Shown here: one piece after another, positions 1,591 through 32,935 of the stretch
Layout of the letters: the number at the start of each line of letters is the position of its first letter
How positions within the stretch are numbered: the first letter of the stretch is position 1
Virus record (IMG/VR): IMGVR_UViG_3300046171_000231
Location: 62,001-126,000 of that record
Length of the DNA stretch: 64,000 nucleotides
Reading direction: 5' to 3' (one strand)
Made by a program: the position numbers and the translations under genes
Notes under the pieces: model-generated
What the model was told of the DNA's origin: nothing
The model's database searches: none
What the model saw: only the letters and a program-made list of their open reading frames with translations

Positions 1591-1609
1591 AAGATTATTT
1601 CCTCATCAA

Positions 1610-1617
1610 TATTTATA
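1610..1617 (-). promoter_or_regulatory. T4-type late promoter TATAAATA
   Basis: Exact consensus about 20 nt upstream of ATG 1590. It contains the stop codon of 1613..2725. Confidence 0.75.
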
Positions 1618-2725
1618 CGATAGTCCAAGAACATCCTGATGGAACAGTGACTGCAATTCCAGCATTAATTGCAATTGGTCCTGCACTCATCGCATTCTTT
1701 GTTGAAGTAACTTGATAGTTGACTGCCACTGCCTTATCATTTTCAAAGAAGACCGTGTTTGTTGATGCACCACCAACAGGAGCACCAGCAGGTAGATTTG
1801 ATAAACTTGAACCATCACCACTGAAAGATGTTGCAGTTAATATTCCAGTTACGACAGCTCCCGTTTGTGTGGTTTCAAATTTCTTGGCATTATCCCAGTA
1901 CAATTCTACACCACTGTCAGGTAATACTTTTAATCCAACATCGGTATCTTTGGGCTTTATAATTATAGGTACTGCACCATTACTCTGTAAAATATTCTCA
2001 TAAGGTGTGCCATCGTGATAAATTTTAAAGTCTAAAAAATTACCACAATAAATTTTATTTTCATCAGCAGTATAAGAACTATCTGCCATCTTTATATTGT
2101 GCGTATTTGACTCTAAATCACCGCCTAGCTGTGGTGAAGTATCAGAGACTAAATCCGTATCAATACCAGTTAAATTAGCACCACTACCAGAAAAACTTGA
2201 TGCAGTTACAATACCTGCAAAATTTGCACCACCAGTAATACTAAGAGTTGCTCCGATACCTATGGCAGCTGAAGGATTACCAACCTCGAATCTACCATTA
2301 TGTGTTCGTGCTACTTTTGAACCTGCACTATACAATATGACACAATCTACTGTTGTTTCTAATCTCTCAGCACTATATGGTCCTCCTGTTATAAAGAAAG
2401 AACTAGTTGTTCCAACACCAATTTCTAAATCACCAGCAGAACTTTTTATTCTGGTAGGATGTGTATCTAAACATATTTCACCAGAGAATGTTGATACTCC
2501 AGCAACACTTAAATTATCTAAGTTTGTATGACCATCTACATCTATATCCCCATTGATATCTAATGGACTGGCGAATGTTGAAACACCAGCAATGTTCAGT
2601 GCATTTAATCCACTTATCTCTGTACAAGTTACAATTCCAGATACAATGATACCTGTGTCTGTGTACTCAACAGTACTCAGACCCGCACGGTTTGCAATTT
2701 TATTAACTCGTATCTCGGATGACAT
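1613..2725 (-). CDS. tail fibre protein
   Basis: DVDGHTNLDN and GIVTASSFSGSGANLT repeats, C-terminal NAMSAGPI...WTIV domain. Confidence 0.75.
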   Translation of the reverse strand: MSSEIRVNKIANRAGLSTVEYTDTGIIVSGIVTCTEISGLNALNIAGVSTFASPLDINGDIDVDGHTNLDNLSVAGVSTFSGEICLDTHPTRIKSSAGDLEIGVGTTSSFFITGGPYSAERLETTVDCVILYSAGSKVARTHNGRFEVGNPSAAIGIGATLSITGGANFAGIVTASSFSGSGANLTGIDTDLVSDTSPQLGGDLESNTHNIKMADSSYTADENKIYCGNFLDFKIYHDGTPYENILQSNGAVPIIIKPKDTDVGLKVLPDSGVELYWDNAKKFETTQTGAVVTGILTATSFSGDGSSLSNLPAGAPVGGASTNTVFFENDKAVAVNYQVTSTKNAMSAGPIAINAGIAVTVPSGCSWTIV

Positions 2726-2747
2726 TTATATCTTTTTGATTATTTAT
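2726..2747 (-). promoter_or_regulatory. late promoter/cassette junction ATAAATAATCAAAAAG
   Basis: Motif recurs upstream of 8 fibre genes. Confidence 0.7.
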
Positions 2748-2761
2748 TAATTAACTATAAG

Positions 2762-2923
2762 TTAATCTGCCTCTGCTGGTGTATTTCCAGCAGCGACCCA
2801 TTCAAGATATTCTTGATAGAATCTATTATCTGGATCTTTAGGTATTATCATACCTTTTTCAGCAAGGATGTAATTTGTTTCATTTCCATCCTCATCTTTC
2901 ATTTTTTTGTAAGAATAAGTCAT
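2762..2923 (-). CDS. 53-aa tail fibre assembly/chaperone-like protein (absent from the ORF track)
   Basis: MTYSYKKMKD...IPKDPDNRFYQEYLEWVAAGNTPAEAD. ATGA overlap with the fibre stop. The motif is typical of small proteins that follow phage fibres. Confidence 0.7.
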   Translation of the reverse strand: MTYSYKKMKDEDGNETNYILAEKGMIIPKDPDNRFYQEYLEWVAAGNTPAEAD

Positions 2924-4620
2924 AATTCTGCGTCTACTGTGTAAGCTAGGATACCAAAACCATTACCTGATCCAGATGTGCCATAGCTGTCTTCAATGTG
3001 TCTGAGGAAAAAACCTTTGGTTCTTACTTCTGTTGTATTGTTATTCCAGTCAACTTGTTGACTTCCAACTGCAACCTGTTCTATGTGAATATCACCTTGA
3101 TTAGTTGACCCATAAATTGTAAGAGTCGGAGACGCTCTCATTTCAACCTCAAATCTTTCAGTGAAATCATAGTAAGAGTTATGTTTACTAAAACTATGTA
3201 CACCGTCACCAGCGTACCAAGAAGATACTGCTAATGTATAATTAGTTCCACGGTTTGAATCTGTTGAACGTTGGTAATAGCGTTTGCATTTAAGTAAAGT
3301 TGTGCTTATGTCTTCATGTTTAAAGTCACTCGCTGTGCCAGTAGTGGTTGGTTCTAATTGTACTCCTGTTAACATCCATTCATTTGATGTTGAGTCTGTA
3401 AAATTAACTTGTCCAGTTGCACTTGAAGGATCTGTTGAACCTCTCCAAGCAGTATTTAAAGTTCCACCTTGTACTGCTGAACCAGCAACTAACCAGAATT
3501 GAATTTCTAAGGAACTACCATTATCAAATCCAAATTCACCAGTCGTATCAGCAGGAAAATCTATTGTATATCTGTTCCAATTAGTATTTGATACTGTATA
3601 AGAACCAGAGACATCTCTGTTATTATCACGATCATGTAATTCAACAATATATGTTCCACTTTTATTACATTTTACATAAAAAGATAAAGTGAATCTTTTA
3701 GCACCGCTTGTTCCTTTTGCAAACGGAGCTAAATTAAATCCCTCAATTTTATGAAACAATTTTACTTCTTCATTACTTGCGATTGAAGTATCTGCTGTTG
3801 TACAGTTTACTCTATAACTTTGATGAAAACCATCAGGTGAATCTCCTGAGTGTCTAATTCTAAATGCTGCTGAACTATTTTGATAATAAAAGTACCATCT
3901 GTCTAAATGATAACCAGAAGAAGTTACACTAGTAAAATCAGTAGCTCTTTGTGAGACAAGCATTTCACCATTTATTATCGCATTATATGAGGCTGCAGCA
4001 CTAATACCAGTTAAGTTTGCACCACTACCACTGAAACTTGTTGCTGTTACAATACCAGATGAATTAATACCTTTTCCAGTGGCCATTTTTATGTCGCCAG
4101 TGGTATTTACAGTTCCAGCATTACTAACTCCAAAAGTTCTAGTATCTGAGTTATTCGTTATTAATAATATATCTTCATCATCAATACCTCCACCTCTACC
4201 ACTTGCCCTCAATTTTAAAACAGCACCTTGAGTTGCAGCACCAGAGGTGTTAATAAATTCAACAATAGGAGAAGCACTATTTCCTGTGAGACTTAATTTT
4301 GTTCCATTATAAGTTAAATTTGCTTCACCATTTAAGTTAACACCACTACCACCAGTGATTACTCTGTTGTCGGCATTGTTTGCTATGGTTACTTGTGTTG
4401 GCAATGAAGTTAAGTTGGCACCACTTCCTACAAAACTTGTTGCAGTCACAACACCAGCGATGCTTACATTATCTGCATTTAAATGTCCGTCTACATCTAA
4501 ATCACCATTTAAATCTAATGTAGTGACTGTGGTAACTCCAGATACAATAAGACCCTTCTCAACGGTAGGTGATCCATCCGCTAATTGATTAGTTATTTTA
4601 TTGGCTCTTATTCTGGACAT
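2920..4620 (-). CDS. tail fibre with C-terminal carbohydrate-binding-like domain
   Basis: Fibre repeats, then NAIINGEMLVSQR...DRW...TGVQLE...CKRYY domain also present in 13587..15713. Confidence 0.75.
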   Translation of the reverse strand: MSRIRANKITNQLADGSPTVEKGLIVSGVTTVTTLDLNGDLDVDGHLNADNVSIAGVVTATSFVGSGANLTSLPTQVTIANNADNRVITGGSGVNLNGEANLTYNGTKLSLTGNSASPIVEFINTSGAATQGAVLKLRASGRGGGIDDEDILLITNNSDTRTFGVSNAGTVNTTGDIKMATGKGINSSGIVTATSFSGSGANLTGISAAASYNAIINGEMLVSQRATDFTSVTSSGYHLDRWYFYYQNSSAAFRIRHSGDSPDGFHQSYRVNCTTADTSIASNEEVKLFHKIEGFNLAPFAKGTSGAKRFTLSFYVKCNKSGTYIVELHDRDNNRDVSGSYTVSNTNWNRYTIDFPADTTGEFGFDNGSSLEIQFWLVAGSAVQGGTLNTAWRGSTDPSSATGQVNFTDSTSNEWMLTGVQLEPTTTGTASDFKHEDISTTLLKCKRYYQRSTDSNRGTNYTLAVSSWYAGDGVHSFSKHNSYYDFTERFEVEMRASPTLTIYGSTNQGDIHIEQVAVGSQQVDWNNNTTEVRTKGFFLRHIEDSYGTSGSGNGFGILAYTVDAEL

Positions 4621-4644
4621 ATTGCTTTTTGATTATTTATGATG
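4606..4644. repeat. 39-nt exact direct repeat, copy 1 (late promoter plus gene start)
   Basis: tcttattctggacatattgctttttgattatttatgatg is identical at 6742..6780. Confidence 0.9.
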
Positions 4645-5053
4645 GTTCAGTTGGCCAAGTAACTGATGAATCATCAAGATAACCTTGTTCATTTAAACTT
4701 GGATTTGCACTTGATGGAAGATCTCTAAGTGCTTGACGATATGTTTCATATGATGTTTTAATTCCAACAGGAACATCACCTAATTGAGACCAATCAGTTT
4801 CAGTAAGTTTAATATTTCTTACCACTCTTAATTCATTCATCGGAAATTTTGTTTGCAAGTCATCATACTTTGCCTTGAAAGTTGCCCAGTCTTTAGATGG
4901 TGTACTAAGAATTGATTCATTAGTATCTGTTGTAATTCCAACAACCTCTTGACATTTTGATAAGTAAGTAGATTCATCTACAATACCTTCATCAAATCTA
5001 AATTGTGTGATGCCAATACCTATAAGTGTTTGTTGTATTATGTGTTCGTACAT
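4637..5053 (-). CDS. phage tail assembly chaperone
   Basis: LRVVRNIKLTETDWSQLGDVP...YRQALRDLP...WPTEPS motif. Probable start MYEHII at 5053. Confidence 0.75.
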   Translation of the reverse strand: MYEHIIQQTLIGIGITQFRFDEGIVDESTYLSKCQEVVGITTDTNESILSTPSKDWATFKAKYDDLQTKFPMNELRVVRNIKLTETDWSQLGDVPVGIKTSYETYRQALRDLPSSANPSLNEQGYLDDSSVTWPTEPS

Positions 5054-5055
5054 GA

Positions 5056-6756
5056 TTAACCTTTCTCGTATTCCCAAACTTGGAGTATGTTTTGACTATG
5101 ATGATACCATTGTAAACCCACACTTGTAAAGTCCACTAGACCTTGAGTTTTCAAACTAATTGAAGTTCCAGCACATTCAAAACTACCCATCAGGTGAACT
5201 GTACGATGATGTCTCGATAGTCCACTACCTCCAGTATAGCTTCGACCATCCATATTACCCATAATACGCTCGTTTGCAATCACAGTAGTCCAACTTCCAC
5301 CACCTTCTTGTTTTTGAATTCTCCACATCGCATCACCATTGCTATTAGCATCAGAACCCTGCCAACATTGTGATTGATGGTGTATCACAATCAGATTACC
5401 TGCTTTTTTAGGAGTATAACTTGACAGTATTGTCCTTAGATCAGTATAGGAATTAGAAGTAATGCTTACACCAGTAAAGGTAGCATACGTAGAATAATTT
5501 ACAAGTGGATAGAAATGGTTTCCACTTGTATATAGTTTACCATCAGATCCGATGCGAAATCTTTCTGTTGTTGTTCCACTTGAAGGTGAAGTATAAAATG
5601 CAAGATCTCCAATTGAATCAGTGGATGTACGATGATGTAATATTGCTGCACCCACATGAGTATCATCTGAAGTATTCGCAAATGCAATACCAATTTTTGA
5701 AGTGTTGCTATTTGTTTGTGATCTAATTACAAGATGATAATTATTTTTATCTGATACATCACTTTCTGCTGTGAGATCCTTATCAAGCAATAATAAACCA
5801 GTGCTAGTTTCTACAGTTCCGATGGAAATTTTTCCATCTGGATTAATACGCATCTTTGGCACTTTGCCATTCAAGTTATCGGTATTACCACCACTAGTTC
5901 CTCCAACATCCGTAAGGAAATCTATTTTATTTTGACCATTACCTGCATCAGTACCAATAACTAGTCTATCACCGCCAGCTTCATATCCAAATAAAGCAAG
6001 ACCACTTCCGTGACTATGTGCTATGAATAATGCATCACCATTATTACTACCACCATCAGCAGCAACTCCAATATAATTAGAAATTGAATCAAGGAAGTTT
6101 AAAGGAAAACTATTATCTCCAGCTTCTATATTACCGCCCTTAATATGTAAATCACCAGCAGTATCAAGTCGCATTTTTTCGGCACTAACAGCATTAGTAC
6201 CACCACCAATATGGAAAGATAAATCTTTATTAAGTCCTGTTCCAATAGAAGTTAAGTTTGATTTGTGTTGTATATTAAAATCAGCATTGACATTATTTGT
6301 CGTATTTAAAGCTACTCTATAAGCTGAAGAATTATCTTCTACACCTATTTCAACAGTTCTTTCAGTACCAACAATATCAACATCATAAACTGAGGAGGTA
6401 GTACCTTTTAATATTGTACCATTTGCAGTAATTTGCCCACTAAAAGTATGAATTCCAGTATGAATCGCACCAGATGCTTGTGCCTGAATCTTTACGTTAC
6501 CACCAGAATCCTTGATTGCAGTTGCATCAATACCAGTTAAGTTTGCACCACTTCCTACAAAACTTGTCGCAGTAACAACACCTGTTACATTAATATTCGT
6601 AGCTTGATGTTGAATAGAAGTTGTAATACCAGTAAGATTTAAATTATTAATACTTCCTGTGACTGTAGTAACTCCAGCTATAACTAATCCATGAGAAACG
6701 GTAGGTGCTCCGTTTGCCATTCTGTTTGTTATAAGATTAGTTCTTATTCTGGACAT
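5056..6756 (-). CDS. tail fibre protein
   Basis: MSRIRTNLITN N-terminus, EKMRL/ERFRI beta-repeats, distinct C-terminal tip. Confidence 0.75.
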   Translation of the reverse strand: MSRIRTNLITNRMANGAPTVSHGLVIAGVTTVTGSINNLNLTGITTSIQHQATNINVTGVVTATSFVGSGANLTGIDATAIKDSGGNVKIQAQASGAIHTGIHTFSGQITANGTILKGTTSSVYDVDIVGTERTVEIGVEDNSSAYRVALNTTNNVNADFNIQHKSNLTSIGTGLNKDLSFHIGGGTNAVSAEKMRLDTAGDLHIKGGNIEAGDNSFPLNFLDSISNYIGVAADGGSNNGDALFIAHSHGSGLALFGYEAGGDRLVIGTDAGNGQNKIDFLTDVGGTSGGNTDNLNGKVPKMRINPDGKISIGTVETSTGLLLLDKDLTAESDVSDKNNYHLVIRSQTNSNTSKIGIAFANTSDDTHVGAAILHHRTSTDSIGDLAFYTSPSSGTTTERFRIGSDGKLYTSGNHFYPLVNYSTYATFTGVSITSNSYTDLRTILSSYTPKKAGNLIVIHHQSQCWQGSDANSNGDAMWRIQKQEGGGSWTTVIANERIMGNMDGRSYTGGSGLSRHHRTVHLMGSFECAGTSISLKTQGLVDFTSVGLQWYHHSQNILQVWEYEKG

Positions 6757-6780
6757 ATTGCTTTTTGATTATTTATGATG
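6742..6780. repeat. 39-nt exact direct repeat, copy 2
   Basis: Identical to 4606..4644. Confidence 0.9.
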
Positions 6781-9117
6781 TTATACTCCGAACCGACCAC
6801 GATCAAGTTCAAAGTGATTCTTGATTTCTGTTGCTGATAATGCACGATTATATATTCTTACAACAGCGATCTTACCATCCCATCTTTCATAGTCATCTCC
6901 TCTTGATGCAATAGCAAATCCAGCCGTACTAACTACTGCTAGAGAACTTCCAGCACTTGCAGAGTTAGCAAATGCACCATTGATATACCACCTATTCACA
7001 TTATTACCACTGTCATACTGCCATACATGATGATGCCAAGTTTTATCAGGGAAATTTTGTCCAGTAATATTACCACTACCAGCACCAACTCCACTATTAT
7101 TATAATGGAACTGACCATCTGGATCAGCAATCATATTAAATTGATTTGGAAATCCACTTCCATATCTTGATACTATCACCTCTCTACCAGCACCGTCATA
7201 CCAAATCCAAGATTCAATTGTCATAGATGGGGTATTTAATACTTCTGCTATATTTGGAGATCCACCTGCTCCTCCTGCAATCTGTACTCTACCTTCGTTT
7301 GACACACAATCTAAGTACCCACCACGTCCTACTCTATAGTTAAATGAACCACCGTTTACAGTCATTGGTGTATTACTACTACTACTTGTCCAATCTGTTG
7401 TTGAATGTGCCAAAGCAGCAGATAAATTAGCTGAGTTTGCTATACCACCATTATCACTATATCCAGTTAATCTTCCAAAGTCACAGTCAAATATTAATCC
7501 ACTTCCACTTCCTTGAGAATATTGATTGATCACTCCCTTAATATTGAATGTTCCTGCTCCTTGAGAATGAGAGGAATCTGTAGTGTTGGTTATAGTACCA
7601 TATTCATTAATTCGCATCGCTTCATATGCGACTGCACCATGTTTTCTTACATCAAATCCTAAACATCCATCATAATCACCATCACCAGTATTTGCTTTAA
7701 ATCCTCTAATACCAGCAAAGATTGCTTGGGATGTTTTTCCTGATGTATGATGTCCTTGGAATACTATTCCACCAGTGGGAGTTGCATTATAATCAGCATT
7801 ATCTTTTAAAAATATTTGACCTTTTGCTGTCCCTTCACCCAAATCAGCAGCATATATTTGTAGAGCACTAGTTGCACTGGTAGTATTAATACCAATTCTA
7901 CCGTTTGAAATGATGCGAAGTCTTTCATATAAACCAGCATAAAATATTTGATCTACACCTGAACCTCCATAATGAACCATATCCTCAGAGGCATCCAACT
8001 GAATATATGCCAATTGACTACCAGCATTATAAAATCTTACACCAGCACCACCAGAAGCACTTTTATCTAAAACAAATTGAGCATTATTATTTGCATTTCC
8101 CTTATTTACCCAAATATACTCATCAGATTGAATGCGAAGTTTCTCATTCCCCTCTGTCGTAAATTTTATATGACCATCAGAACCTGTATCAATAGTTTCG
8201 ACTTCTGTATTTCCTTCAAATATTTTATCAGCAACAATTCCAGTTAATTGTGATCCATCACCACGATATGATGTTGCTGTTATAATTCCAGCATTACCTA
8301 AATGAATATTACTTCCTACACTTACAAAATCATCTACGTCTACACCTGAACGTGCTGTTATGATTCCGATAGAATCTATATTTGTTACATCTTCATATGT
8401 TATTGTGCCACCGATTGATAGTCCACCTGTGATAGTGGTCATTCCAGATATTACAACACCATTCTGAATTGTTGTTGCACCATTTGCTGCTGCGTTTGAT
8501 ATTGAATTAACTCTGATTCTACCTGCACTTGCACCACCACCAAAGGTTCCAAAGTCTGCAAGTCCTAAAACGTCAGGTATTAAATCATCTCCTTCAGCAA
8601 CGATTAAATCAGCACTACCATCAACTTTGATATCTGCATACTGTGTATATGCTTTTGATGCGGATGCAGGAACATCAACAGTCACAGAAGATGGTACACC
8701 AAGAACCTGATTGGTGTAATACATCTTGTTAAGTGGACTTGATGCAGTCGCACTTAATGCAGTTCCTAATCCAGCAGGTAGATTTGTTAAGTCTGATCCA
8801 TCTCCTACAAAACTTGTTGCTGTTATAACACCTGCGTTTCCTAATTTTATATTACTACCTACATCTACAAAATCATCTACATCAGCATATGCTACATTAA
8901 GACCAGCTGAGTGTAAATCAGATGTGCCTGTTTTGAAATTAGATGCTGAAGATATACCAGTTGTATTAACGTGGTTATGAATATGAATATTACCTGCGTG
9001 ATCTAATTTTAAAGCTTCACTTGTATCGTTTATATGCAGCGTAAATTGATTATCAATCCCCGTTGGAGTGGTGATACTCGTGATACCTGATATACTTTTT
9101 TGACTAATCTGTGACAT
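6781..9117 (-). CDS. tail fibre with C-terminal LamG/ConA-like lectin domain
   Basis: TYEDVTNIDS repeats, C-terminal TIESWI...WHHHVWQYD...WYING...GKIAVVRIYNRALSATEI. Confidence 0.8.
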   Translation of the reverse strand: MSQISQKSISGITSITTPTGIDNQFTLHINDTSEALKLDHAGNIHIHNHVNTTGISSASNFKTGTSDLHSAGLNVAYADVDDFVDVGSNIKLGNAGVITATSFVGDGSDLTNLPAGLGTALSATASSPLNKMYYTNQVLGVPSSVTVDVPASASKAYTQYADIKVDGSADLIVAEGDDLIPDVLGLADFGTFGGGASAGRIRVNSISNAAANGATTIQNGVVISGMTTITGGLSIGGTITYEDVTNIDSIGIITARSGVDVDDFVSVGSNIHLGNAGIITATSYRGDGSQLTGIVADKIFEGNTEVETIDTGSDGHIKFTTEGNEKLRIQSDEYIWVNKGNANNNAQFVLDKSASGGAGVRFYNAGSQLAYIQLDASEDMVHYGGSGVDQIFYAGLYERLRIISNGRIGINTTSATSALQIYAADLGEGTAKGQIFLKDNADYNATPTGGIVFQGHHTSGKTSQAIFAGIRGFKANTGDGDYDGCLGFDVRKHGAVAYEAMRINEYGTITNTTDSSHSQGAGTFNIKGVINQYSQGSGSGLIFDCDFGRLTGYSDNGGIANSANLSAALAHSTTDWTSSSSNTPMTVNGGSFNYRVGRGGYLDCVSNEGRVQIAGGAGGSPNIAEVLNTPSMTIESWIWYDGAGREVIVSRYGSGFPNQFNMIADPDGQFHYNNSGVGAGSGNITGQNFPDKTWHHHVWQYDSGNNVNRWYINGAFANSASAGSSLAVVSTAGFAIASRGDDYERWDGKIAVVRIYNRALSATEIKNHFELDRGRFGV

Positions 9118-9122
9118 ATTTT

Positions 9123-9129
9123 TATTTAT
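9123..9129 (-). promoter_or_regulatory. late promoter ATAAATA
   Basis: Immediately upstream of ATG 9117. Confidence 0.6.
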
Positions 9130-10472
9130 TAGACGACAACATAATTACCGTCAATGAAGAGATTACCATTTATAGTAACTGGACCTGCCATCAGACCATT
9201 AAATGCAGTTCCAATATAATGATTATCATTTAAAGTATTATCGTGAATTATCATTCCATTACTTATATACATTCCTTTTGCCATACCATTACTTACAGCA
9301 AAACTATTTCCCTGTCCTGTATGATGATGACACCAGTAATAAAGTAATGCAGGTGCATCAGCAGGTATCGTCCATACAACTTGACGGACTGTAGCAGCAT
9401 TAAATCCACTTACATACTGTGCCATTGTTTTATTGACACCATCTAATTTATATGTAACACCTGTAATATAATGACCGTGACTATTGTGATCACCGCCAGG
9501 TCCGAGACTGAACATCAATGGATGATTTGCACCACCATATACTTCATTACTATTATCAGACTGGTCAAAGGTATAGGTATGACGTTTATTAATTTCAAAC
9601 AATGCAGGTTTCTCAACTCCATCTAAGTAAAATACTCCTGTTGATTGACCTCCAACTGTATCTGTTCCGACTGTGACAGTGATTGTTGTGTCGATAGATG
9701 ATGCACCGATACCTTGCAAATCATTATCATCAAGACTACTCGTATGAACACCAATTGATTTATTGGTTGCGATACCAGCAGTGTATGTACTCCAAGTTCC
9801 ACCAGCACCAGCTCCACCACCACCTGCAATACTAATATCTACTGTGGTTCCATTGACTGCAAATGTATTACCAGTTCCTACAAAATTAAGTTGAGTAATA
9901 CCAGCACCAATCTGAGTTCCTGCAGATTGAATACCAACTTCAGAAGCACCACTGAATAATGTTGCTGTTGCAACTCCAGCAATACTTACATTATCAAGAT
10001 TAGTATGTCCATCTACATCTAATTCTACAAAGTCACCATCACCTTTAAATGTTGTGGCAGTGATAACACCTGCATTTCCTAATTTTATATTACTTCCTAC
10101 ATCTAAAAAGTCATCTACATCTACACCTGACCTTGCTGTGATGATACCAAGTGAATCAACATTCTTTACATCTTCATATGTTAAGACTCCACCAACAGTA
10201 ACATTACCTGAAAAGTTTGCAGTAGATCCAGATATTGCCCCAGTAAAAGACGAAACACCAGCAACGGTCATTCCTGCATTTATATCAACAGCGTATGTGT
10301 TGAATGTTGCAGCAGTTCCAGTAATTATATTATCTGTGGACGCTATACCAGTAAGCCCAGCACCATCACCTACAAAGGATACTGCAGTAATAATACCTGT
10401 AGATTTTATATTATGACTGTTTATATTGGATGCGGTATGAATACCTGGACCAAGTATCCGTGTAAATGCCAT
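9129..10472 (-). CDS. tail fibre with cupredoxin-like insert and C-terminal adaptor motif
   Basis: Fibre repeats, HPLMF...YYWCHHHTGQG, NGLMAGPVTI...GNYVVV. Confidence 0.7.
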   Translation of the reverse strand: MAFTRILGPGIHTASNINSHNIKSTGIITAVSFVGDGAGLTGIASTDNIITGTAATFNTYAVDINAGMTVAGVSSFTGAISGSTANFSGNVTVGGVLTYEDVKNVDSLGIITARSGVDVDDFLDVGSNIKLGNAGVITATTFKGDGDFVELDVDGHTNLDNVSIAGVATATLFSGASEVGIQSAGTQIGAGITQLNFVGTGNTFAVNGTTVDISIAGGGGAGAGGTWSTYTAGIATNKSIGVHTSSLDDNDLQGIGASSIDTTITVTVGTDTVGGQSTGVFYLDGVEKPALFEINKRHTYTFDQSDNSNEVYGGANHPLMFSLGPGGDHNSHGHYITGVTYKLDGVNKTMAQYVSGFNAATVRQVVWTIPADAPALLYYWCHHHTGQGNSFAVSNGMAKGMYISNGMIIHDNTLNDNHYIGTAFNGLMAGPVTINGNLFIDGNYVVV

Positions 10473-13227: not shown

Positions 13228-13583
13228 TGAGGAATGAATGTGTTTATACCAACCACCCAACTAGGAACTACTGTAGTAACAACTCCTACTTGTGATTTTG
13301 GATATTTTGCCTTGATTTCTGCAATCTTATCTTTCCAAGTTGTTGTTCCATTCACTGCATCCCAATACTGCATATCCTGTTGTTCTTCTAAACTTGGATA
13401 CTCTGCAGCACGAGCATCAGAGTAATCAACTGTTGTAACCGTATCAATACCCACCACACAAGTTGTACCGATTCCTACAACATCTGCTTTGAATAGTTGA
13501 TAATCTAAATTACCTTCAGATACTGGTATGAATGCACCATCAGAAAGTCTTTTAATTGTTGTGTCGTCTAAAAATTTATACAT
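13224..13583 (-). CDS. tail fibre chaperone-like protein
   Basis: IKRLSDGAFIP...NLDYQ and RAAEYPSLEEQQDMQYWD...IKAKYPK motifs. Confidence 0.65.
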   Translation of the reverse strand: MYKFLDDTTIKRLSDGAFIPVSEGNLDYQLFKADVVGIGTTCVVGIDTVTTVDYSDARAAEYPSLEEQQDMQYWDAVNGTTTWKDKIAEIKAKYPKSQVGVVTTVVPSWVVGINTFIPQ

Positions 13584-13586
13584 TTT

Positions 13587-15713: not shown

Positions 15714-15738
15714 TTACACAATTTTTTAGTTATTTATA
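15714..15738 (-). promoter_or_regulatory. late promoter/cassette junction
   Basis: TATAAATAACTAAAAAA containing the stop codon of 15734..16228. Confidence 0.75.
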
Positions 15739-16228
15739 TTTTAATTCCACCAAAATTTCCAATACCTCTATCATATAAAAAGATAACAGTATATCTTGGT
15801 TTGACCACTGGTTCGACCCAATGTAATAAATCAGTCGGATATTCTTTAGCCCAACCTGCTACATTCTTAGAGAATCCACCTTCATAACTTAAACCCTCTT
15901 CAGAATCTTCAAGATGTAATGTAGTAAAGTATGCAGGTCCGTGGTCATCACAATGTTTTGGAATCCAGTCACCTACATCATACTTATTAATTACTATTTT
16001 TGATAAAGGTAATGGTTTCTTCGGAGAAATCTTTACTAAATCAACAAGTAAATCTTTTGGTAATGATGTATCACCTACACATTGATAAGATCCAATCTCG
16101 TGATTCTCTACTCCTCGAATAGGTCTGAATGTTGAACGATCAAGATAGTAAGCATCATCTAATAAATCTAATCTATCTCTTAATGAATGTGCTTCTTCTA
16201 CTTCAATTAGTTTATATTCATGCACCAT
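15734..16228 (-). CDS. 2OG-Fe(II) oxygenase
   Basis: INKYDVGDWIPKHCD (HxD)...LLHWVEPV...RYTVIF. Confidence 0.75.
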   Translation of the reverse strand: MVHEYKLIEVEEAHSLRDRLDLLDDAYYLDRSTFRPIRGVENHEIGSYQCVGDTSLPKDLLVDLVKISPKKPLPLSKIVINKYDVGDWIPKHCDDHGPAYFTTLHLEDSEEGLSYEGGFSKNVAGWAKEYPTDLLHWVEPVVKPRYTVIFLYDRGIGNFGGIKI

Positions 16229-16736
16229 AAGTTGCTAACTTCCAAGTCGGAACCATATTAACATTCCATAAATTATCCTGAGTGCTAGTCTCTGTTTCAT
16301 AAGTATATGTTCCATCAAACAATAAAGCATCTCCTTTATCTACATTATATTTTGTACCATTTAATATTAGATGATTGCCATCATTCAATGAAATTGAAAG
16401 AAAAGATCCAATCGCCCTGACTGGTTCATTCAAACCAATCTTTGCTGGATCACTTGGTGTGGTTGGATATAAGATACCAGTGTTTGCAGGTATTTTCATA
16501 AAGGTTGAAACTAGGTATGAACTCAAAACTTCACTTGTGATATAAGTTTTCCAAGCTGTCTTAAGTGATTCGGGATATGAATAATATCTTAAAATTTTAT
16601 ATGAAGAAACTTGATTACCACCTGCATCACTATTACGATATTCCTTTCCAGCAGCATCTGGTAGTGTTGGTAATGCTGCCACCATAGCGTCACAATTATT
16701 TGTAGTAAGATAACCTGTGCGTTTAATTATTGTCAT
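16218..16736 (-). CDS. degenerate double-stranded beta-helix (oxygenase-like) protein
   Basis: FMKIPANTGILY...SISLNDG...YNVDKGDALLFDG. Metal-binding His residues are not evident. Confidence 0.4.
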   Translation of the reverse strand: MTIIKRTGYLTTNNCDAMVAALPTLPDAAGKEYRNSDAGGNQVSSYKILRYYSYPESLKTAWKTYITSEVLSSYLVSTFMKIPANTGILYPTTPSDPAKIGLNEPVRAIGSFLSISLNDGNHLILNGTKYNVDKGDALLFDGTYTYETETSTQDNLWNVNMVPTWKLATYGA

Positions 16737-16737
16737 T

Positions 16738-17319
16738 TTACCTATCTGAAATCATATTAATACCAGAAAGATCATTTTCTGATTTAATCTCTTCGGAGAC
16801 TCCACCTGCCATTTTAGCATTTACATCATTTCTTACTGTGGTTTTATCTTTATATGTCCAGTTTGGATCATTTTGATAAGAATCTTTATACTTACCATTC
16901 AAATCTCTTACTTCATCAATATATTCTTTCATCGCATTGAAACTTGCTTTTTGATCGTCAGTTAAAGATGAAGCATCTAATAATAATTTCATCATATCAA
17001 TAACGTGATTCAACTGATGATGATAATTATATTTCTTACGAATATGAATTCCTGCAGTGGTATCAAGATCAAGTTCAGATGCTATTCTTGGTCTAGTTGC
17101 TTTGTTTTGCACTGAACCTGAATCAAAATCACCAACATATTCATGTGTTTCAGGATTAAATGTCTCTAACTTACCTTTACAATACTTGGTATTCACTTTA
17201 TCAAGATGTGAACCAATCATTTTTGCCACAAGAGCACCTGACAACTTATTAAAAATAAGTGTCTGAGGTTGTTCTATATTTTCCTCTTTAAGTAAATCGT
17301 CGAATTGTTGTGGATACAT
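16738..17319 (-). CDS. hypothetical protein, possibly a fibre chaperone
   Basis: 193-aa ORF with GAGGAG RBS, directly downstream of a fibre gene. Confidence 0.5.
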   Translation of the reverse strand: MYPQQFDDLLKEENIEQPQTLIFNKLSGALVAKMIGSHLDKVNTKYCKGKLETFNPETHEYVGDFDSGSVQNKATRPRIASELDLDTTAGIHIRKKYNYHHQLNHVIDMMKLLLDASSLTDDQKASFNAMKEYIDEVRDLNGKYKDSYQNDPNWTYKDKTTVRNDVNAKMAGGVSEEIKSENDLSGINMISDR

Positions 17320-17336
17320 TTTAACTCCTCTTCATA

Positions 17337-19734
17337 CTATGTGGAATCTGCTCCAGCCCAATAAATTGAACCGCTGCTATTTTTAATCCATAAAGTTTTT
17401 CTATCTTCGTTACCAGATGCGGTATTATTGTTTACCCAGTAAGAGTATACACGATTCCATCTAACAACGAACATAGTATTATTAGGGACACTGACTGCAC
17501 TAGTTGCCCAGTTTCTTGCTGTGTCTCTATCACCAGCGTTGCCTTGTCCGTACACATCTATGTATAATACAGTAGCAGTGCTTGGTTTGTTAGTCAAGTT
17601 ATTGTAATCACGATACCAGCTACCATGATTACCGTCCAATAAATCAGAATCAAGTCCACTTCCTGAACCATCATTACCAGAAGTCCAGACTGTGGCTTCA
17701 CTACCATCAGCATGCCATTTTAATCCACTAGTACCACCTCTAAGAATAATGTAATCATTTTGTTGTTGATTAACTATGTAAAAAGCATCATCACTAGCAC
17801 TAAATTGTAAATATGCTCTATCAGTTGTACCTTCTCTAAATCTGATGTAAGGACTAGATGAACCTTGTAATATTATATGTTCGTCTGTACCAGTGTTTAC
17901 AACTAGTTGACCATTCATTGTGTCATTAGTATCTGACCTTACAAAGTTAGCACCATGAATACCATCGACAGTATCAGCATCTAATCCTGTTCCAGATCCA
18001 TCATTACCTGAGTTCCAGATAACATTACCATTAATATAACAGTCACCATTACCACTTCCTTGTACAGATATTCCACCACTTGTTTGTCCTCCACCATATA
18101 TTCTTGTATGTCCACTATTCGCATTTCCGTAACCAATATACATTCCATCATCTGAACCACCAGACTCATTTCGCATCACTCTTGCATTTAAATAGGAATC
18201 GTTTGATGATAAAGTCAAGTTTTGTGCCTGAACCCAACTGAAGTGTTGTACCATCAAAAGTTAAATTAGATTCTGCAGTTGCAGTTCCATCACCATCAGA
18301 TGTTAAGACTCGATTATTTGAATCACCTGCTATTGAATTGATTGCAACTGTAACTGTCTTAAATGTATTATCACCAGCTAAGAATGTACCACTATTCTTT
18401 GTTCCACTATCTCCAAGACGAGCAATCGGTACTGTACCAGATGAAAGGTTTGTTGCATTTAAACTACTTAAACCTGAACCACTTCCTGAAAATACTGATG
18501 CGGATAAAGTATTTGTTGCGTAATTAAATGTGAGTTGAGGATCAGTTTTAGCACTAATCATCGTACCACTTGTTAGGTTGGTAAGTACAACTCTTTCAGT
18601 TCCAGAAGATGCACTACTTAATGAAGCACCTGTGTTTGTAAGATTCGCTCCATCTCCTACAAATGATGTTGCTGTAACAATGCCTTGAAATTCTGCTCCT
18701 GCTTTTGCAACAATATCACCACTATTAAAAATAGTTGCACCTGCACCAATTGGAGTATCAGCACCAAGAACGTTTACACCTGCAATTTCAATACCTACAT
18801 TATGTAAGTTAGATGTTCCTGTTTTAAATTGAAGTGCAGTTGATATACCAGTCGCTTTTGTGTTACCAGTAATATCAAGATGACCAGTTCCAGTAATCGA
18901 CTTATTTAATAAATCTAAGTTACCACCAAGTTGAGGACTTGTATCACTTACAAGCTCTGCAAGAACAGCAACCGTTGCCACACCAGCAGCACCAGTGCTT
19001 GCAATTACACTTAATCCACTTGAACCACTAAAGTCAAGTGAGGATATACTACCAGCAGTACCAACAACAGTGCCATCTGGACCTTTAACTGTAAGACCAC
19101 CAATCGCACCAGTTCCTGCAGCAGTGATTCCAGATAAATTAGAACCATCTCCATAGAATACACCAGCAGTCACAATACCAGTAAAGACTGCTGCTCCTGA
19201 ATTATAAATTGTAGAACCAGAACCTATTGGAGTATCAGCACCAAGAACATTGATACCTGCAATTTCAATACCTATACTATGTAAATTAGAAGTTCCTGTT
19301 TTAACTGTTGTTTCATCTATAACAACTGTTCCAGTTCCAATTGATAAAATACCTGTTACTCTTGCATCACCATTTACAATTAAATCAGTTGTGGCACCAC
19401 CAACAACAACATCTCCAATTGTTGTGACACCTGATATACTTACATTATCTAAATTTGTATGTCCATCTACATCTAAATCTACAAAATCTCCTGTCGCAGC
19501 TGTTACGATACCTACGATTGAAACACCAGCACCGACATGAATATCTTTCTGTGCTGTTATAATACCAACTGAATCTATACTTGTTACGTCTTCATAAGTC
19601 AGTACACCACCGACTGACAAATTACCACTTACATCCGCATCTCCATTAACATCTAATCCAGTTGCGGTGATAATGCCAGTTTGATAATCTTCATTGGGTT
19701 TGATGACACCCTTTGTAATTCGGGTCAATCCCAT
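17337..19734 (-). CDS. long tail fibre protein (1-nt insertion at ~18212)
   Basis: ORFs 18166..19734 and 17337..18257 join as GTKLDLSSNDSYLNARV. WNSGNDGSGTGLDADTVDG repeats. Confidence 0.75.
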
Positions 19735-19735
19735 C

Positions 19736-20062
19736 TTATGTAATCTCCATTATAGTAAGAGTTGCATCTACACTATTATTTGTATCACTATCGACTGTTA
19801 TAGTATCTGCTGTTTCTAATACTACCTTATTTCCTGACATAAATTCAAGAGATGATCCTTGAGGTATTGGAGCATTTTTTAATAATTTAACATCGTCAGT
19901 TGATGGTCTTGTAATTCCAACTCCTACAAGACAACCTGAACCAGAAGTATTTGCAAGTGTGATACCAATTACAACAGTTGTAGTTGCACTCGGAACAACA
20001 TAAACATTTTGAGTTGTAATACCAACGTTCGCTTTTGTTTTTAATTTAAAGGTATTTGCCAT
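19736..20062 (-). CDS. conserved virion structural protein
   Basis: MANTFKLKTK...VYVVPSATTTVVIG...KVVLETAD...IMEIT family, usually next to an ALAIALG protein. Confidence 0.6.
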   Translation of the reverse strand: MANTFKLKTKANVGITTQNVYVVPSATTTVVIGITLANTSGSGCLVGVGITRPSTDDVKLLKNAPIPQGSSLEFMSGNKVVLETADTITVDSDTNNSVDATLTIMEIT

Positions 20063-20069
20063 TTTGTTA

Positions 20070-20297
20070 TTATCCTAGTGCGATTGCAAGTGCTGTAGCA
20101 TCAGCTAGTGTTGCAGCAGGATTACCATTTGTATTTATGGTGCCTGTAATATTAGCATCTCCCTGAACATACAATGCATAATTTCCTTGAGGTGCTGTCG
20201 TATTAATTCCAACAGAGTTTGCAATACCAACCTGTGCAGTTGTATCGTTTACATTTACTAACGAATTAAATTGTGATGCTTCTCTGTTCTTAGCCAT
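20070..20297 (-). CDS. small structural protein
   Basis: VGINTTAP fibre motif, C-terminal DATALAIALG. Confidence 0.6.
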   Translation of the reverse strand: MAKNREASQFNSLVNVNDTTAQVGIANSVGINTTAPQGNYALYVQGDANITGTINTNGNPAATLADATALAIALG

Positions 20298-20317
20298 ATT
20301 TCTTTTTAGTTATTTAT
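20298..20317 (-). promoter_or_regulatory. late promoter/cassette junction
   Basis: ATAAATAACTAAAAAG upstream of ATG 20297. Confidence 0.7.
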
Positions 20318-21898
20318 TAACTTGTACAGTATGCAGTCCAACTAAAACGACCCGTATCAAATCCTGTTCCATATGGAAAGAATCTTATTGTTGTTAAAGC
20401 ATTTCCACCTAAATCAGGAACACCCATTACAAACATATTTCCACTTTGTGTTCGTCTGTTTGCCATTCCATGAAATATCCACATATTAGAAGCTGAAGAT
20501 GATGAAAATGTCATAAAAATTTCACCTGTATCACTACCTGCATTTAAGTTAGTATCAAAAGCATCTATCTGATTTTTACTTCCTTCATAAGCATTACCTG
20601 TTCCACTTTTTGTATAATTATAATTACCACTTGCAAGAATCCCTGCGGAAGTTCCTAATCTGAAAGCAGGAGAACCAGATCCACTTGTAGAAATATTATG
20701 CCCAACAAAATCAACTTTGTAACAGTTCGCAGGAAGAGTAAAATCGTAACTCCCACCTCCTGATAGAGGACCAGCATTTGTTGTTCGATGAACTAATACT
20801 CCATTTGTTGAAGTTGTAACACCAACGTTCATTTCATTACCACCCGCACCTCTTAAATAGATGTTTCCAACCATATTACTATGGAGAGTACATATGTAAT
20901 ATAATTGTGCAGGTGCATCTAGTTCTGGAGTAAAGAACTGAACTCCATTTTGATCACCAGTAACACCAGCGGTATATGCGGAACCACCAGTTGTCAAACG
21001 GAACTGAAATGGGTGTGCTGAACCAGTAGTATTATTAAAACGATATTTCTGCCCTCGAATCAAATATAAATCTGGATCATCTGCAGAAGCTATCTACACC
21101 TCCACCACTAAATCTATATGCTGACGAACCATTTGCAGTCACAGTAAAATTAACGACTGGTGCCTTCATCAGGGTGCTGGTATATTAGTTAAGCTTGCAC
21201 CACTGATTGCTGGTAATGCACCTGAAAGTTTTCGATGCAGTAAGTGTTGAAATTCTTGCGTCAGCAACAGTTCCTGATGCAATATTTGATCCATTAAGAT
21301 TGGTAAGATTAGCACCACTGATTGCTGGCAATGCACCAGATAATTTAGATGCAGTAAGTGTAGATATTCTTGCATCGGCAACTGTGCCAGTAAGTTGACC
21401 AGCGGGTAAACTGGTTAAGTTTGCACCACCTCCACTAAATGAACCTGCGGTAAACAAGTTTGTATTTGGATTGTAAGTTAGTCCTGTATCAGTTTCTGCT
21501 CCTTGAGATCCAGAAGCACCGTCTGAGAATAATGGATATACAGTTTCGTTCGCAGTATTATTTGCAGTTACAGTAATGTTTGTTGCAGTTGTAGCAGTAC
21601 CTGTGATTCCACCTGCAGCTGATATTGCACCTGCAAAGAATGAAGTTCCTCCAGTTACACTTAACCCACTTCTCGCTGTTACAACACCTACTGAATCTAT
21701 ATTAGTTACGTCTTCATATGTTAATGTTCCACCAACAGAAACATTTCCAGTCACAGAAAGAGTTCCACCAATGCTGACGTTTGTACTTATCGCAACATTG
21801 TTGGCATTTAAATTTAAATTGTTAGGACTTGTAATCGTCGGTGTGCCTGAAGCACCAATCAGATTAACCTCCTTTACACCAAAACCCTTCTCTGCCAT
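20317..21898 (-). CDS. tail fibre with cupredoxin-like domain (about four 1-nt insertions between ~21090 and ~21235)
   Basis: ORFs 21185..21898, 21169..21381 and 20317..21063 join through ...IPAPDEG...FTVTANGSSAYRF...DPDLYLIRGQKY. HPF...YYICTLHSNM motif. Confidence 0.7.
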
Positions 21899-21918
21899 AT
21901 GACTTTTTGATTATTTAT
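21899..21918 (-). promoter_or_regulatory. late promoter/cassette junction
   Basis: ATAAATAATCAAAAAG containing the subtilase stop codon. Confidence 0.7.
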
Positions 21919-32930: not shown

Positions 32931-32935
32931 GTAGT

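What the first reader, a model, noticed from the sequence alone, without database searches (positions are those of the whole stretch)
1591..21918. Cassette-like array of receptor-binding fibre modules joined by a conserved stop/late-promoter junction
Seen: ten fibre units start with ATAAATA at 1610, 2741, 4634, 6770, 9123, 10487, 13221, 15731, 20311 and 21912. Eight of them carry the longer motif ATAAATA-A(TC/CT)-AAAAA just before the ATG. In six, the TAA of the upstream gene lies inside the promoter. Units are mostly fibre plus a cognate chaperone, with divergent tips. Established: TATAAATA is the T4 gp55 late promoter, and repeated promoter elements have been proposed to drive gene shuffling in T4-like phages. 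Inference: these are self-expressing, exchangeable adhesin cassettes that are gained, lost or reordered by recombination at the junction, giving a recombinase-free host-range repertoire. This is my best candidate for an undescribed system.
Basis: partly seen in the sequence, partly recalled or inferred. Interest (0 to 1): 0.75.

Follow-up and report, generated by a model that had tools for sequence, protein, structure and literature searches.

The report
Cyanophage tail-fibre cluster with shared late promoters
This is the variable host-recognition (tail-fibre) gene cluster of a T4-like cyanophage, where most fibre genes carry the same extended late-promoter and short-leader sequence; that sequence marks gene boundaries, but the evidence is against it being the point where whole cassettes are swapped.

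Summary
All ten ATAAATA sites lie on the coding (minus) strand just upstream of an ATG. Eight carry ATAAATA-A(TC/CT)-AAAAA, against 0.01 expected by chance. Six contain the stop codon of the gene before them. The genome is a 236-kb T4-like cyanomyovirus with psbA and psbD, and the region is its host-recognition cluster of mosaic fibre-like genes.

The extended motif is not the generic late promoter. Only 10 of 34 promoter-like sites in the genome have it. It also precedes the tail-tube gene and a distant tail gene, and it is conserved across many relatives (78 copies on the gene strand and none on the other strand in 80 loci).

The cassette-exchange mechanism is not supported:
- Unit order is fixed in relatives down to about 80% identity.
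- Homology between relatives often starts exactly at the motif but almost never ends there (11 versus 0 of 28 blocks; 71 versus 2 in a wider survey).
- The other breakpoints lie inside genes, often in shared shaft repeats.
- One recent swap crosses the motif and resolves in the next gene's first codons.

The exchanged unit is therefore the distal fibre part plus accessory genes. The promoter and N-terminal anchor form a fixed scaffold. This is a new variant of known fibre mosaicism, of moderate interest.

The parts
21904..21918 (-). Junction J21918: extended late-promoter motif (ATC type). It contains the TAA of the Peptidase_S8 gene. The ATG follows 13 nt downstream, at 21898.
   Evidence: The junction is conserved in G003, G004, G005 and phage S-T4.
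20317..21898 (-). Fibre-like gene, split in the window into 21185-21898 and 20317-21063. It is a single 525-aa gene in G001. The C-terminus resembles a baseplate-wedge/tail-fibre connector.
   Evidence: (phrog_677, phrog_6942), and 71 (1-nt indels at 21233, 21171 and 21090).
20303..20317 (-). Junction J20317: extended motif (ACT type). The preceding stop overlaps it by 1 nt. The ATG is at 20297.
   Evidence: Similarity to G003 and G004 begins here. In G002p a recently swapped tract crosses it.
15734..20297 (-). Unit of six genes: a 75-aa gene; a 108-aa conserved virion protein (19736-20062); a fibre of about 800 aa, split in the window into 18166-19734 and 17337-18257; and accessory genes of 193, 172 and 164 aa.
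15723..15737 (-). Junction J15737: extended motif (ACT type, full TATAAATA octamer). It contains the preceding TAA. The ATG is at 15713.
   Evidence: G001 has a 17-bp insertion just upstream, which moves the stop codon out of the motif.
13224..15713 (-). A 708-aa fibre (phrog_4492) followed by a 119-aa phrog_9114 protein.
13213..13227 (-). Junction J13227: extended motif (ACT type). It contains the preceding TAA. The ATG is at 13205.
   Evidence: From the motif onward, about 135 nt are identical in four genomes, while the sequence immediately upstream is unrelated.
10490..13205 (-). A 481-aa fibre-like gene, small ORFs, a 173-aa gene and a 118/123-aa phrog_9114 protein.
10479..10493 (-). Junction J10493: extended motif (ACT type). 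It contains the preceding TAA. The ATG is at 10472.
9129..10472 (-). A 447-aa fibre-like gene. It shares 71-73% identity over about 120-135 aa with the 1186/1271-aa protein encoded at 24361-28176.
9123..9129 (-). Junction J9129: core heptamer only, 5 nt from the ATG at 9117. Homology to relatives runs across it.
6781..9117 (-). A 778-aa fibre-like gene with a C-terminal Laminin_G_3 (concanavalin-like lectin) domain.
   Evidence: PF13385, E 4e-17.
6762..6776 (-). Junction J6776: extended motif (ATC type). The preceding stop lies 4 nt upstream. The ATG is at 6756.
   Evidence: Homology spans it in G004 but begins at it in G003.
4637..6756 (-). A 566-aa fibre followed by a tail-fibre assembly chaperone (4637-5077).
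   Evidence: PF16778, E 8e-13.
4626..4640 (-). Junction J4640: extended motif (ATC type). It contains the chaperone's TAA. The ATG is at 4620. The junction and the first codons are nearly identical to J6776.
   Evidence: Repeat D18 pairs 4523-4644 with 6659-6780 at 78% identity.
2762..4620 (-). A 566-aa fibre (phrog_4492) followed by a 53-aa ORF.
2733..2747 (-). Junction J2747: extended motif (ATC type). The preceding stop lies 14 nt upstream. The ATG is at 2725.
1613..2725 (-). A 370-aa fibre-like gene. The segment 2201-1820 is replaced in the near-identical relative G001, and both edges of the replacement lie in copies of shaft repeat D3.
1610..1617 (-). Junction J1616: TATAAATA without the extended part. 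It contains the preceding TAA. The ATG is at 1590, with a 19-nt spacer.
3998..4069 (-). Reference copy of the 72-nt shaft repeat D3, which encodes INSSGIVTATSFSGSGANLTGISA. Eight copies occur across the fibre genes. Related families D1 and D2 have 21 and 6 copies.
   Evidence: Breakpoints are enriched in these repeats.
21915..23825 (-). Conserved 636-aa subtilase-family (Peptidase_S8) gene flanking the array. It was used as the anchor to find relatives.

Best explanation
Window 1-24000, continuing to about genome position 52000, is the host-recognition cluster of a T4-like cyanomyovirus. It holds a dozen or more fibre-like late genes.

Each transcription unit begins with a lineage-conserved subclass of the gp55-type late promoter, ATAAATA-AYYAAAAA. 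This is followed by a short, A-rich leader of 13-17 nt that has no Shine-Dalgarno sequence. The genes are packed so tightly that the previous stop codon falls inside the promoter.

The promoter plus the first 30-250 codons (the N-terminal anchor of each fibre) is a positionally fixed, conserved scaffold. The part that varies and is exchanged between phages is the distal shaft, the tip and the accessory or chaperone genes.

I infer that exchange occurs by ordinary homologous recombination (the phage has UvsY). One crossover would fall in conserved shaft repeats or N-terminal coding sequence. The other would fall in the homologous promoter and N-terminus of the next unit. The motif therefore marks the downstream edge of each variable segment simply because that is where the next conserved gene begins. 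The array probably grew by tandem duplication of units together with their 5' ends.

Shown here: the motif statistics, the conservation, the breakpoint asymmetry and the repeat enrichment. Inferred: promoter activity, the near-leaderless transcripts and the recombination pathway.
For: Identity of the genome and region:
- psbA and psbD are present, as is a PhotoRC-II element.
- A gp33 homologue and UvsY are encoded.
- NATAAATA is the published cyanomyovirus late-promoter consensus (PMC2984593).
- A large fibre-rich hypervariable 'host recognition cluster' has been described in cyanomyophages (PMC7029224).
- The genes give fibre-family PHROG/Pfam hits and form a mosaic network of paralogues.

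The motif:
- 8 copies in the window against 0.01 expected.
- 10 of 34 promoter-like sites in the genome carry it. The motif-to-ATG spacing is 13-17 nt for the eight extended junctions in the array, and 5-22 nt (median 14.5) over all 14 fibre-region sites, against a median of about 25 elsewhere.
- 0 of 10 such genes have an SD-like core.
- Across 80 related loci there are 78 copies on the gene strand and none on the other strand. There is no conservation immediately upstream of the motif.
- It is present in the cultured phages S-T4 and S-SRM01.
- Each junction keeps its ATC or ACT variant in REF, G003 and G004, apart from one-base changes at two junctions in G003. The first junction differs (ACT) in the more distant G005 and S-T4.

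Breakpoints:
- Unit order is conserved in four relatives.
- 11 of 28 syntenic blocks start within 5 nt of a junction, and none of the 28 ends within 50 nt of one.
- In the wider survey the counts are 71 starts against 2 ends.
- 5 of 8 block ends and 5 of 10 recent patch edges lie within 30 nt of repeats that have 3 or more copies. The expected fraction is 9.6% (p = 3.5e-4 and 1.3e-3).
- Both edges of the replaced segment 2201-1820 lie in D3 repeat copies.
- The recently swapped tract in G002p runs through the motif and ends within the first few codons of the next gene.

Other:
- Terminator-like sites are no more frequent than chance, and none lies at a junction.
- J4640 and J6776 together with their N-termini are near-duplicates, which fits tandem duplication.
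Against: - No transcription data exist. Promoter activity, start sites and any special role of AYYAAAAA are inferred from sequence alone.
- Because the stop codon sits in the motif, a boundary at the gene end and a boundary at the motif cannot be told apart by sequence.
- At J13227 about 135 nt are 100% identical across genomes that are otherwise about 80-88% identical. This suggests unusually frequent recent exchange right next to the junction, and a recombination-promoting role would also explain it.
- In the more distant relative G005 the unit order appears permuted. Whole-unit rearrangement therefore does occur over longer time scales, by an unknown route.
- The pairwise comparisons share evolutionary history, so the block counts are not independent events.
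Confidence: 0.62

Rival explanations
1. Each promoter-to-promoter unit is a self-expressing cassette, and recombination at the short conserved junction gains, loses or reorders whole cassettes. This would be a late-promoter analogue of the PeSL elements of T4-type phages.
For: - Similarity between relatives begins to the nucleotide at the motif at seven junction positions.
- Gene content differs between relatives. G004 lacks the block from window 1590 to -1529, and an 80-aa gene sits at different places in G003 and G004.
- Unit order is permuted in G005.
- S-T4 has a much shorter cluster, plus a vestigial promoter and a 36-codon stub.
- PeSL-mediated shuffling is an established precedent (PMC2839356, PMC4122927).
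Against: - The asymmetry is strong: 0 of 28 and 2 of about 3000 homology ends fall at junctions, against 11 and 71 starts. A symmetric cassette joint predicts both equally.
- Unit order is fixed down to about 80% identity.
- Homology spans four junctions.
- Recent events are intragenic.
- The one recent event that abuts a junction resolves downstream of the motif.
- Junction-specific ATC/ACT variants are inherited by position.
- Intragenic repeats of 72-200 nt are far better homology substrates than a 15-nt motif.
Confidence: 0.12
2. The extended motif has no function of its own. It is a relic of common descent, copied along with each fibre gene's 5' end during tandem duplication.
For: - J4640 and J6776 share about 40 identical nt, including the first codons (repeat D18).
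- The fibre genes are paralogous.
- The motif travels with particular N-terminal families across relatives.
- It is absent from the most distant relatives, L084-L101 and L011-L013.
Against: - The N-terminal coding sequences next to different junctions have diverged beyond recognition, and the spacer varies. Yet the nine bases after ATAAATA remain nearly invariant in 53 non-redundant sites from diverse genomes of 34-45% GC.
- The motif also precedes the unrelated tail-tube gene.
- This conservation implies purifying selection on the element itself.
Confidence: 0.15
3. The junction region actively promotes recombination next to it, for example through late-transcription-associated nicks or R-loops that prime T4-style recombination-dependent replication. 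It would act as a hot spot rather than as the crossover site itself.
For: - A tract of 100% identity, about 135 nt long, lies immediately downstream of J13227 in four genomes that are otherwise about 80-88% identical.
- The first 60-100 nt after several other junctions are also very similar.
Against: - Strong purifying selection on N-terminal anchors, together with ordinary recombination in those conserved arms, explains the same pattern.
- There is no direct evidence.
- The 75-aa gene after J20317 diverges quickly.
Confidence: 0.08

Closest known systems
Host recognition cluster (hypervariable fibre island) of cyanomyophages and pelagimyophages (Zaragoza-Solas et al. 2020, PMC7029224)
   Same: Both are large non-syntenic islands (34 kb on average in cyanomyophages) within the structural region. 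Both are rich in tail-fibre genes and in lectin/adhesin-type domains, and both diverge gradually rather than by wholesale replacement. The region here is at least 32 kb and behaves the same way.
   Different: That description does not mention a shared extended late-promoter/leader motif, stop codons embedded in promoters, or the asymmetry of homology boundaries. I did not confirm the flanking landmarks VrlC and gp14 here.
T-even distal tail-fibre locus (gp37/gp38) mosaicism through conserved motifs (Trojet et al. 2011, PMC3157838; the Tetart et al. 1998 'His-box' work is cited from memory)
   Same: In both, a conserved N-terminal or proximal part is joined to a swapped distal adhesin and its chaperone. 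Recombination takes place between short conserved coding motifs shared by divergent fibres. Here the 72-98-nt shaft repeats (GIVTATSF.GSGANLTGI) play that role.
   Different: Here there are ten or more fibre-like units in tandem rather than one locus. Each has its own late promoter of a shared subtype, and the repeat motif is different.
PeSL elements (early promoter plus stem-loop) of T4-type phages (Arbiol 2010, PMC2839356; Comeau 2014, PMC4122927)
   Same: Both are short, repeated regulatory sequences at gene boundaries in hyperplastic regions, and both coincide with the edges of insertions, deletions and replacements.
   Different: PeSLs combine a sigma-70 early promoter with a terminator stem-loop, and they flank both sides of exchanged modules. 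The junction here is a gp55-type late promoter with no stem-loop, and it marks only one side of the variable segments. The PeSL paper I searched (PMC4122927) does not mention cyanophages or late promoters.
T4/cyanophage late promoters (TATAAATA or NATAAATA, recognised by gp55 with gp33 and gp45)
   Same: The core heptamer, the coding-strand placement upstream of structural genes, and the presence of a gp33 homologue (PMC2984593).
   Different: This is a conserved nine-base extension with a fixed, short distance to the ATG, used by a subset of tail and fibre genes only. I found no description of it.

Membership tests
gp55-type (T4-like) late promoter | Core TATAAATA, or NATAAATA in cyanophages | tested here: met
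   ATAAATA is present at all ten sites. The full octamer is present at two. The consensus is taken from PMC2984593.
gp55-type (T4-like) late promoter | Located on the coding strand just upstream of late structural genes | tested here: met
   54 of 59 copies in the genome are on the gene strand. The downstream genes are fibre, tail and tail-tube genes.
gp55-type (T4-like) late promoter | The phage encodes the late transcription factors gp55, gp33 and gp45 | tested here: inconclusive
   A gp33 homologue was found at genome 46455-46673, 67% identical to that of S-T4. I did not search successfully for gp55 or gp45. The literature says all cyanomyoviruses carry them.
gp55-type (T4-like) late promoter | Late-phase transcription start a few bases downstream of the motif | not testable with these tools
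   Needs 5'-end mapping of RNA from infected cells.
PeSL mobile regulatory cassette | Sigma-70 early promoter (-35 and -10 boxes) combined with a stem-loop terminator | tested here: not met
   No -35/-10 pair and no stem-loop at the junctions. Terminator-like sites number 11 against 8.1 expected, and none is at a junction.
PeSL mobile regulatory cassette | The element flanks exchanged modules on both sides | tested here: not met
   Homology starts at the junctions but does not end there: 11 against 0 of 28 and 71 against 2.
Cyanomyophage host recognition cluster | Large variable island in the structural region, rich in tail-fibre genes | tested here: met
   At least 32 kb of fibre-like genes whose content varies among relatives.
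Cyanomyophage host recognition cluster | Lies between VrlC and the neck gene gp14 | not tested
   On one side the flanks found here are a Peptidase_S8 gene and large unnamed structural proteins. I did not identify VrlC or gp14.
Enzyme-driven diversification (shufflon/invertase, integron-like cassettes, diversity-generating retroelement) | Encodes a serine or tyrosine recombinase, or a reverse transcriptase | tested here: not met
   No RVT_1, Resolvase or Phage_integrase match in the 236-kb genome. The controls gave matches.
Mosaic tail-fibre locus (conserved N-terminus, exchangeable distal part and chaperone) | N-terminal parts conserved between relatives while C-terminal parts and downstream accessory genes are replaced | tested here: met
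Mosaic tail-fibre locus (conserved N-terminus, exchangeable distal part and chaperone) | Breakpoints at short conserved coding motifs shared among fibres | tested here: met
   Enrichment of breakpoints in repeats with 3 or more copies: p = 3.5e-4 and 1.3e-3. The replaced segment 2201-1820 is a specific case.

The most novel reading that the evidence does not exclude
The stop/late-promoter junction could be a late-gene counterpart of PeSL elements. On this reading it is a conserved 15-nt regulatory joint that, together with the first codons of the next gene, acts as a portable downstream recombination arm or hot spot. It would let divergent cyanomyoviruses swap distal fibre modules while keeping every unit correctly expressed. 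That would explain the razor-sharp homology edges and the 100%-identical tract next to J13227.
Probability: 0.15. Interest if true: 0.6.

Novelty: new variant of a known kind. Interest (0 to 1): 0.38.

Why it matters
Cyanomyoviruses kill a large share of the ocean's Prochlorococcus and Synechococcus, and this cluster probably decides which cells they can attach to. The results separate a fixed scaffold (a shared late promoter and short leader plus the N-terminal anchor, in conserved order) from an exchangeable payload (distal shaft, tip and accessory genes, bounded by shaft repeats).

That gives a concrete rule for reading host-range variation in viromes. It also gives a simple sequence tag, ATAAATAAYYAAAAA, for finding unit starts in uncultured genomes. 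The extended promoter subclass itself appears not to have been described. It could be tested in the cultured phages S-T4 and S-SRM01, which carry it.

Tried and rejected
- Megablast of the 22-kb region against isolate phages gave only fragments of 60-100 nt. Distant blastn of one junction region found nothing useful. Relatives therefore had to come from IMG/VR.
- Chance occurrence of the extended motif is rejected: 8 found against 0.01 expected.
- A terminator between units is rejected. Terminator-like hits are at the chance level and none lies at a junction.
- No Rfam family matches in the array. The only hit in the window is PhotoRC-II upstream of psbA.
- An endonuclease-driven mechanism was considered. 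The 164-aa gene at 15734-16228 has a weak PHROG 'DNA endonuclease' hit (E 2e-7), but no Pfam hit at E up to 1 and no PDB sequence hit. I left it unassigned.
- DGR, shufflon and integrase mechanisms are rejected because none of the enzymes is encoded.
- My guessed PHROG accession for gp55 (phrog_117) matched nothing anywhere, so it is uninformative.
- Extended-motif genes are not longer or more fibre-like than other late genes in relatives. The median ORF is 232 aa against 210 aa. 'Fibre-specific promoter' is therefore too strong a description.
- A literature search for the exact motif string found no paper.

Full report
**What the window is**

The window is positions 62001-126000 of a single 235,761-bp virus contig with 34.9% G+C. 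It encodes psbA and psbD, with a PhotoRC-II element upstream of psbA. It also encodes UvsY and a tail-tube protein and a gp33 homologue. Its only DNA similarity to isolates is to cyanophages. It is therefore a T4-like cyanomyovirus. Every gene in window 1-30000 is on the minus strand.

**Checking the observation**

- All ten ATAAATA heptamers are at the stated coordinates, on the coding strand, 5-19 nt upstream of an ATG.
- Eight carry ATAAATA-A(TC/CT)-AAAAA, against 0.01 expected.
- The previous gene's TAA lies inside the heptamer at six sites. It overlaps by one base at two more. It lies 4 and 14 nt upstream at the last two.
- The bare heptamer is not over-represented (21 against 32.6 expected). 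What is non-random is the strand (54 of 59 genome-wide), the position and the extension.
- Only two sites have the full T4 octamer. The rest fit the published cyanophage consensus NATAAATA (PMC2984593).

**Gene content**

PHROG and Pfam searches label most large ORFs as tail-fibre-like.

- There is one clear assembly chaperone (4637-5077, PF16778).
- The 778-aa protein has a Laminin_G_3 tip.
- A baseplate-connector-like domain lies at 20317-21063.
- The cluster continues below the window start to about genome position 52000. That stretch holds further fibre genes, including ones with Gly_rich_2 and Peptidase_S74 domains.
- An all-against-all comparison shows a mosaic network of paralogues that share N-terminal and shaft segments.
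- Repeat finding shows 72-200-nt coding repeats scattered through the fibre genes. One of them, D3, encodes INSSGIVTATSFSGSGANLTGISA.

This matches the 'host recognition cluster' described for cyanomyophages (PMC7029224).

**Is the extended motif just the generic late promoter?**

No. Of 34 ATAAATA sites that precede an ORF in the genome, 10 carry the extension.

- Eight are in the array.
- One lies between a 1926-aa tail-fibre gene and a 719-aa tail gene, 37 kb away.
- One precedes the tail-tube gene.

The 20 late-promoter-like sites outside the fibre regions show no shared downstream sequence as a group and have longer leaders, with a median of about 25 nt. For the eight extended junctions in the array the distance to the ATG is 13-17 nt, and over all 14 fibre-region sites it is 5-22 nt with a median of 14.5. 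None of the ten extended-motif genes has an SD-like core. If transcription starts a few bases after the heptamer, as in T4 (this spacing is from my own knowledge), these mRNAs would have leaders of only about 6-10 nt.

**Conservation elsewhere**

The 636-aa subtilase gene and the 108-aa virion protein were used as anchors to fetch relatives from IMG/VR.

- The motif occurs 3-7 times per related contig, always on the gene strand.
- Across 80 loci (1.14 Mb) there are 78 copies on the gene strand and none on the other strand.
- In 53 non-redundant sites the 15-mer is nearly invariant (consensus ATAAATAACTAAAAA). The 30 nt upstream show no conservation, and the spacer varies.
- The most distant relatives lack the motif.
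- The cultured phages S-T4 and S-SRM01 have it.

This points to selection on the element within a lineage, not chance and not mere recent duplication.

**Do breakpoints fall at the junction?**

I assembled four relatives:

- G001: about 98-99% identical to the window.
- G002p: 96-99% identical.
- G003p and G004: about 80% identical.
- G005: about 54% amino-acid identity.

Unit order is the same in G001 to G004.

Of 28 syntenic blastn blocks among the window, G003p and G004:
- 11 start within 5 nt of a junction.
- 0 end within 50 nt of one.

Alignments show similarity beginning abruptly at the heptamer at J20317, J15737, J13227 and J10493 in all comparisons. The same holds at J6776, J4640 and J2747 against G003p. 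Homology simply spans J9129, and against G004 it also spans J6776, J4640 and J2747.

Among 3105 HSPs of at least 200 bp between about 80 related sequences:
- 71 start at an extended junction (29 distinct junctions).
- Only 2 end at one.

A joint between exchangeable cassettes should be a homology end as often as a homology start. It is not.

**Where the other breakpoints lie**

- Five of eight window-G004 block ends, and five of ten edges of divergent patches between the window and the near-identical G001, lie within 30 nt of repeats that have three or more copies. Such positions make up 9.6% of the array (p = 3.5e-4 and 1.3e-3).
- The replaced segment 2201-1820 has both edges inside D3 copies.
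- Recent divergent patches are intragenic. The one exception is a 17-bp indel just upstream of J15737 in G001, which also moves the stop out of the promoter.
- In the one recent swap that abuts a junction (G002p, the C-terminus of the 525-aa gene), the foreign tract runs through the motif and spacer and ends within the first few codons of the next gene. After that the sequences are identical for more than 350 nt. The crossover was in coding homology, not in the motif.
- Each junction keeps its own ATC or ACT variant in the window, G003p and G004, apart from one-base changes at two junctions in G003p.

**Interpretation**

The conserved scaffold is the promoter, the short leader and the N-terminal anchor, in fixed order. 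The exchangeable payload is the distal shaft, the tip and the accessory genes.

The motif marks the downstream edge of each payload because, with no intergenic spacer, that is where the next conserved gene begins. Median intergenic length is 6 bp in S-PM2d (PMC5931967).

Homologous recombination is sufficient to explain the exchange, and no site-specific recombinase or reverse transcriptase is encoded.

The near-identical J4640 and J6776 junctions and their first codons fit growth of the array by tandem duplication.

**What remains open**

- Content does change at the unit level over longer distances. G004 lacks six genes (window 1590 to -1529). An 80-aa gene sits at different places in G003p and G004. 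G005 has a permuted order. S-T4 has only a cluster of about 5.5 kb, plus a vestigial promoter and a 36-codon stub.
- One boundary of the six-gene difference is an early sigma-70-type promoter.
- The 135-nt tract of complete identity after J13227, in genomes otherwise 80-88% identical, hints at very frequent exchange next to that junction.
- These points keep a PeSL-like or hot-spot reading alive at low probability.
- PeSLs themselves are early promoter plus stem-loop elements. The 2014 PeSL paper, the one I searched for these terms, mentions neither cyanophages nor late promoters.

**Verdict**

The locus is a new variant of known tail-fibre mosaicism within a known kind of hypervariable island. 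The extended late-promoter/leader subclass and the one-sided boundary rule are the new details.

Noticed in passing
window 32034 and 30910 (psbA 32029-32808, psbD 30767-31660): Both photosystem genes are truncated in the window (259 and 297 aa) by single extra C bases relative to G003p, where they are intact at 362 and 358 aa. G002p shares the extra C at 30910 and also has an extra C of its own. This pattern suggests 1-nt indel errors in these metagenome assemblies.
   Followed up: partly
window 21233, 21171, 21090 and 18214: 1-nt or 2-nt insertions relative to G001 split two fibre genes. 21898..20317 is one 525-aa gene in G001. 19734..17337 is one gene of about 800 aa in G001 and G002p. G001 has similar splits of its own in other genes. 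These may be real frameshifts or assembly errors.
   Followed up: partly
window 32844-32943 (-), and window ~54600-54660 (-): A PhotoRC-II RNA (Rfam RF01717, 62.8 bits) lies upstream of psbA, downstream of a sigma-70-type promoter. A second early promoter at about 54690-54658 is followed by a similar AAAGGACTCGAAA...TCGTAACCCT stretch, but that did not reach the Rfam threshold.
   Followed up: partly
window 30104-30475 (-): A 123-aa HNH endonuclease gene (phrog_2214, E 2e-33) sits directly next to psbD. This recalls the homing-endonuclease/psbA association known in cyanophage S-PM2.
   Followed up: no
window 19736-20062 (-): The 108-aa protein is a very widespread small virion structural protein. 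It has 340 relatives in IMG/VR. It also has homologues in pelagiphage podoviruses, roseophages, Methylophilales phage Melnitz, rhizobiophages and the S-TIM5 group.
   Followed up: partly
L021:27436-27569 (Synechococcus phage S-T4): A vestigial unit: CTAAATA-ACTAAAAAG followed by a 36-codon ORF beginning MSRIRANN. This is the N-terminus of the window's 566-aa fibres. The ORF then stops just upstream of a carbamoyltransferase gene. It is not annotated in the record.
   Followed up: partly
genome 60413-60470 (window about -1530 to -1588): A conserved sigma-70-type early promoter (TTGACA-N17-TATAAT) lies inside the fibre cluster, upstream of a 70-aa gene. The conserved block shared with G003p and G004 begins there.
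   Followed up: partly
window 15734-16228 (-): A 164-aa gene at the end of a fibre unit gives a weak PHROG 'DNA endonuclease' hit (E 2e-7), with no Pfam or PDB support. It is present in G001 and G002p and absent from G003p and G004.
   Followed up: partly
genome 100-306 and 235251-235457: A 68-aa ORF is repeated at both contig ends at 98.5% identity. This is consistent with terminal redundancy, or with a circularly permuted genome assembled with an overlap.
   Followed up: no
window 11411-11417 and 20132-20138 (-): Two further ATAAATA copies are conserved in relatives. They lie 46 and 69 nt upstream of the 173-aa and 108-aa genes and could be additional internal late promoters.
   Followed up: no
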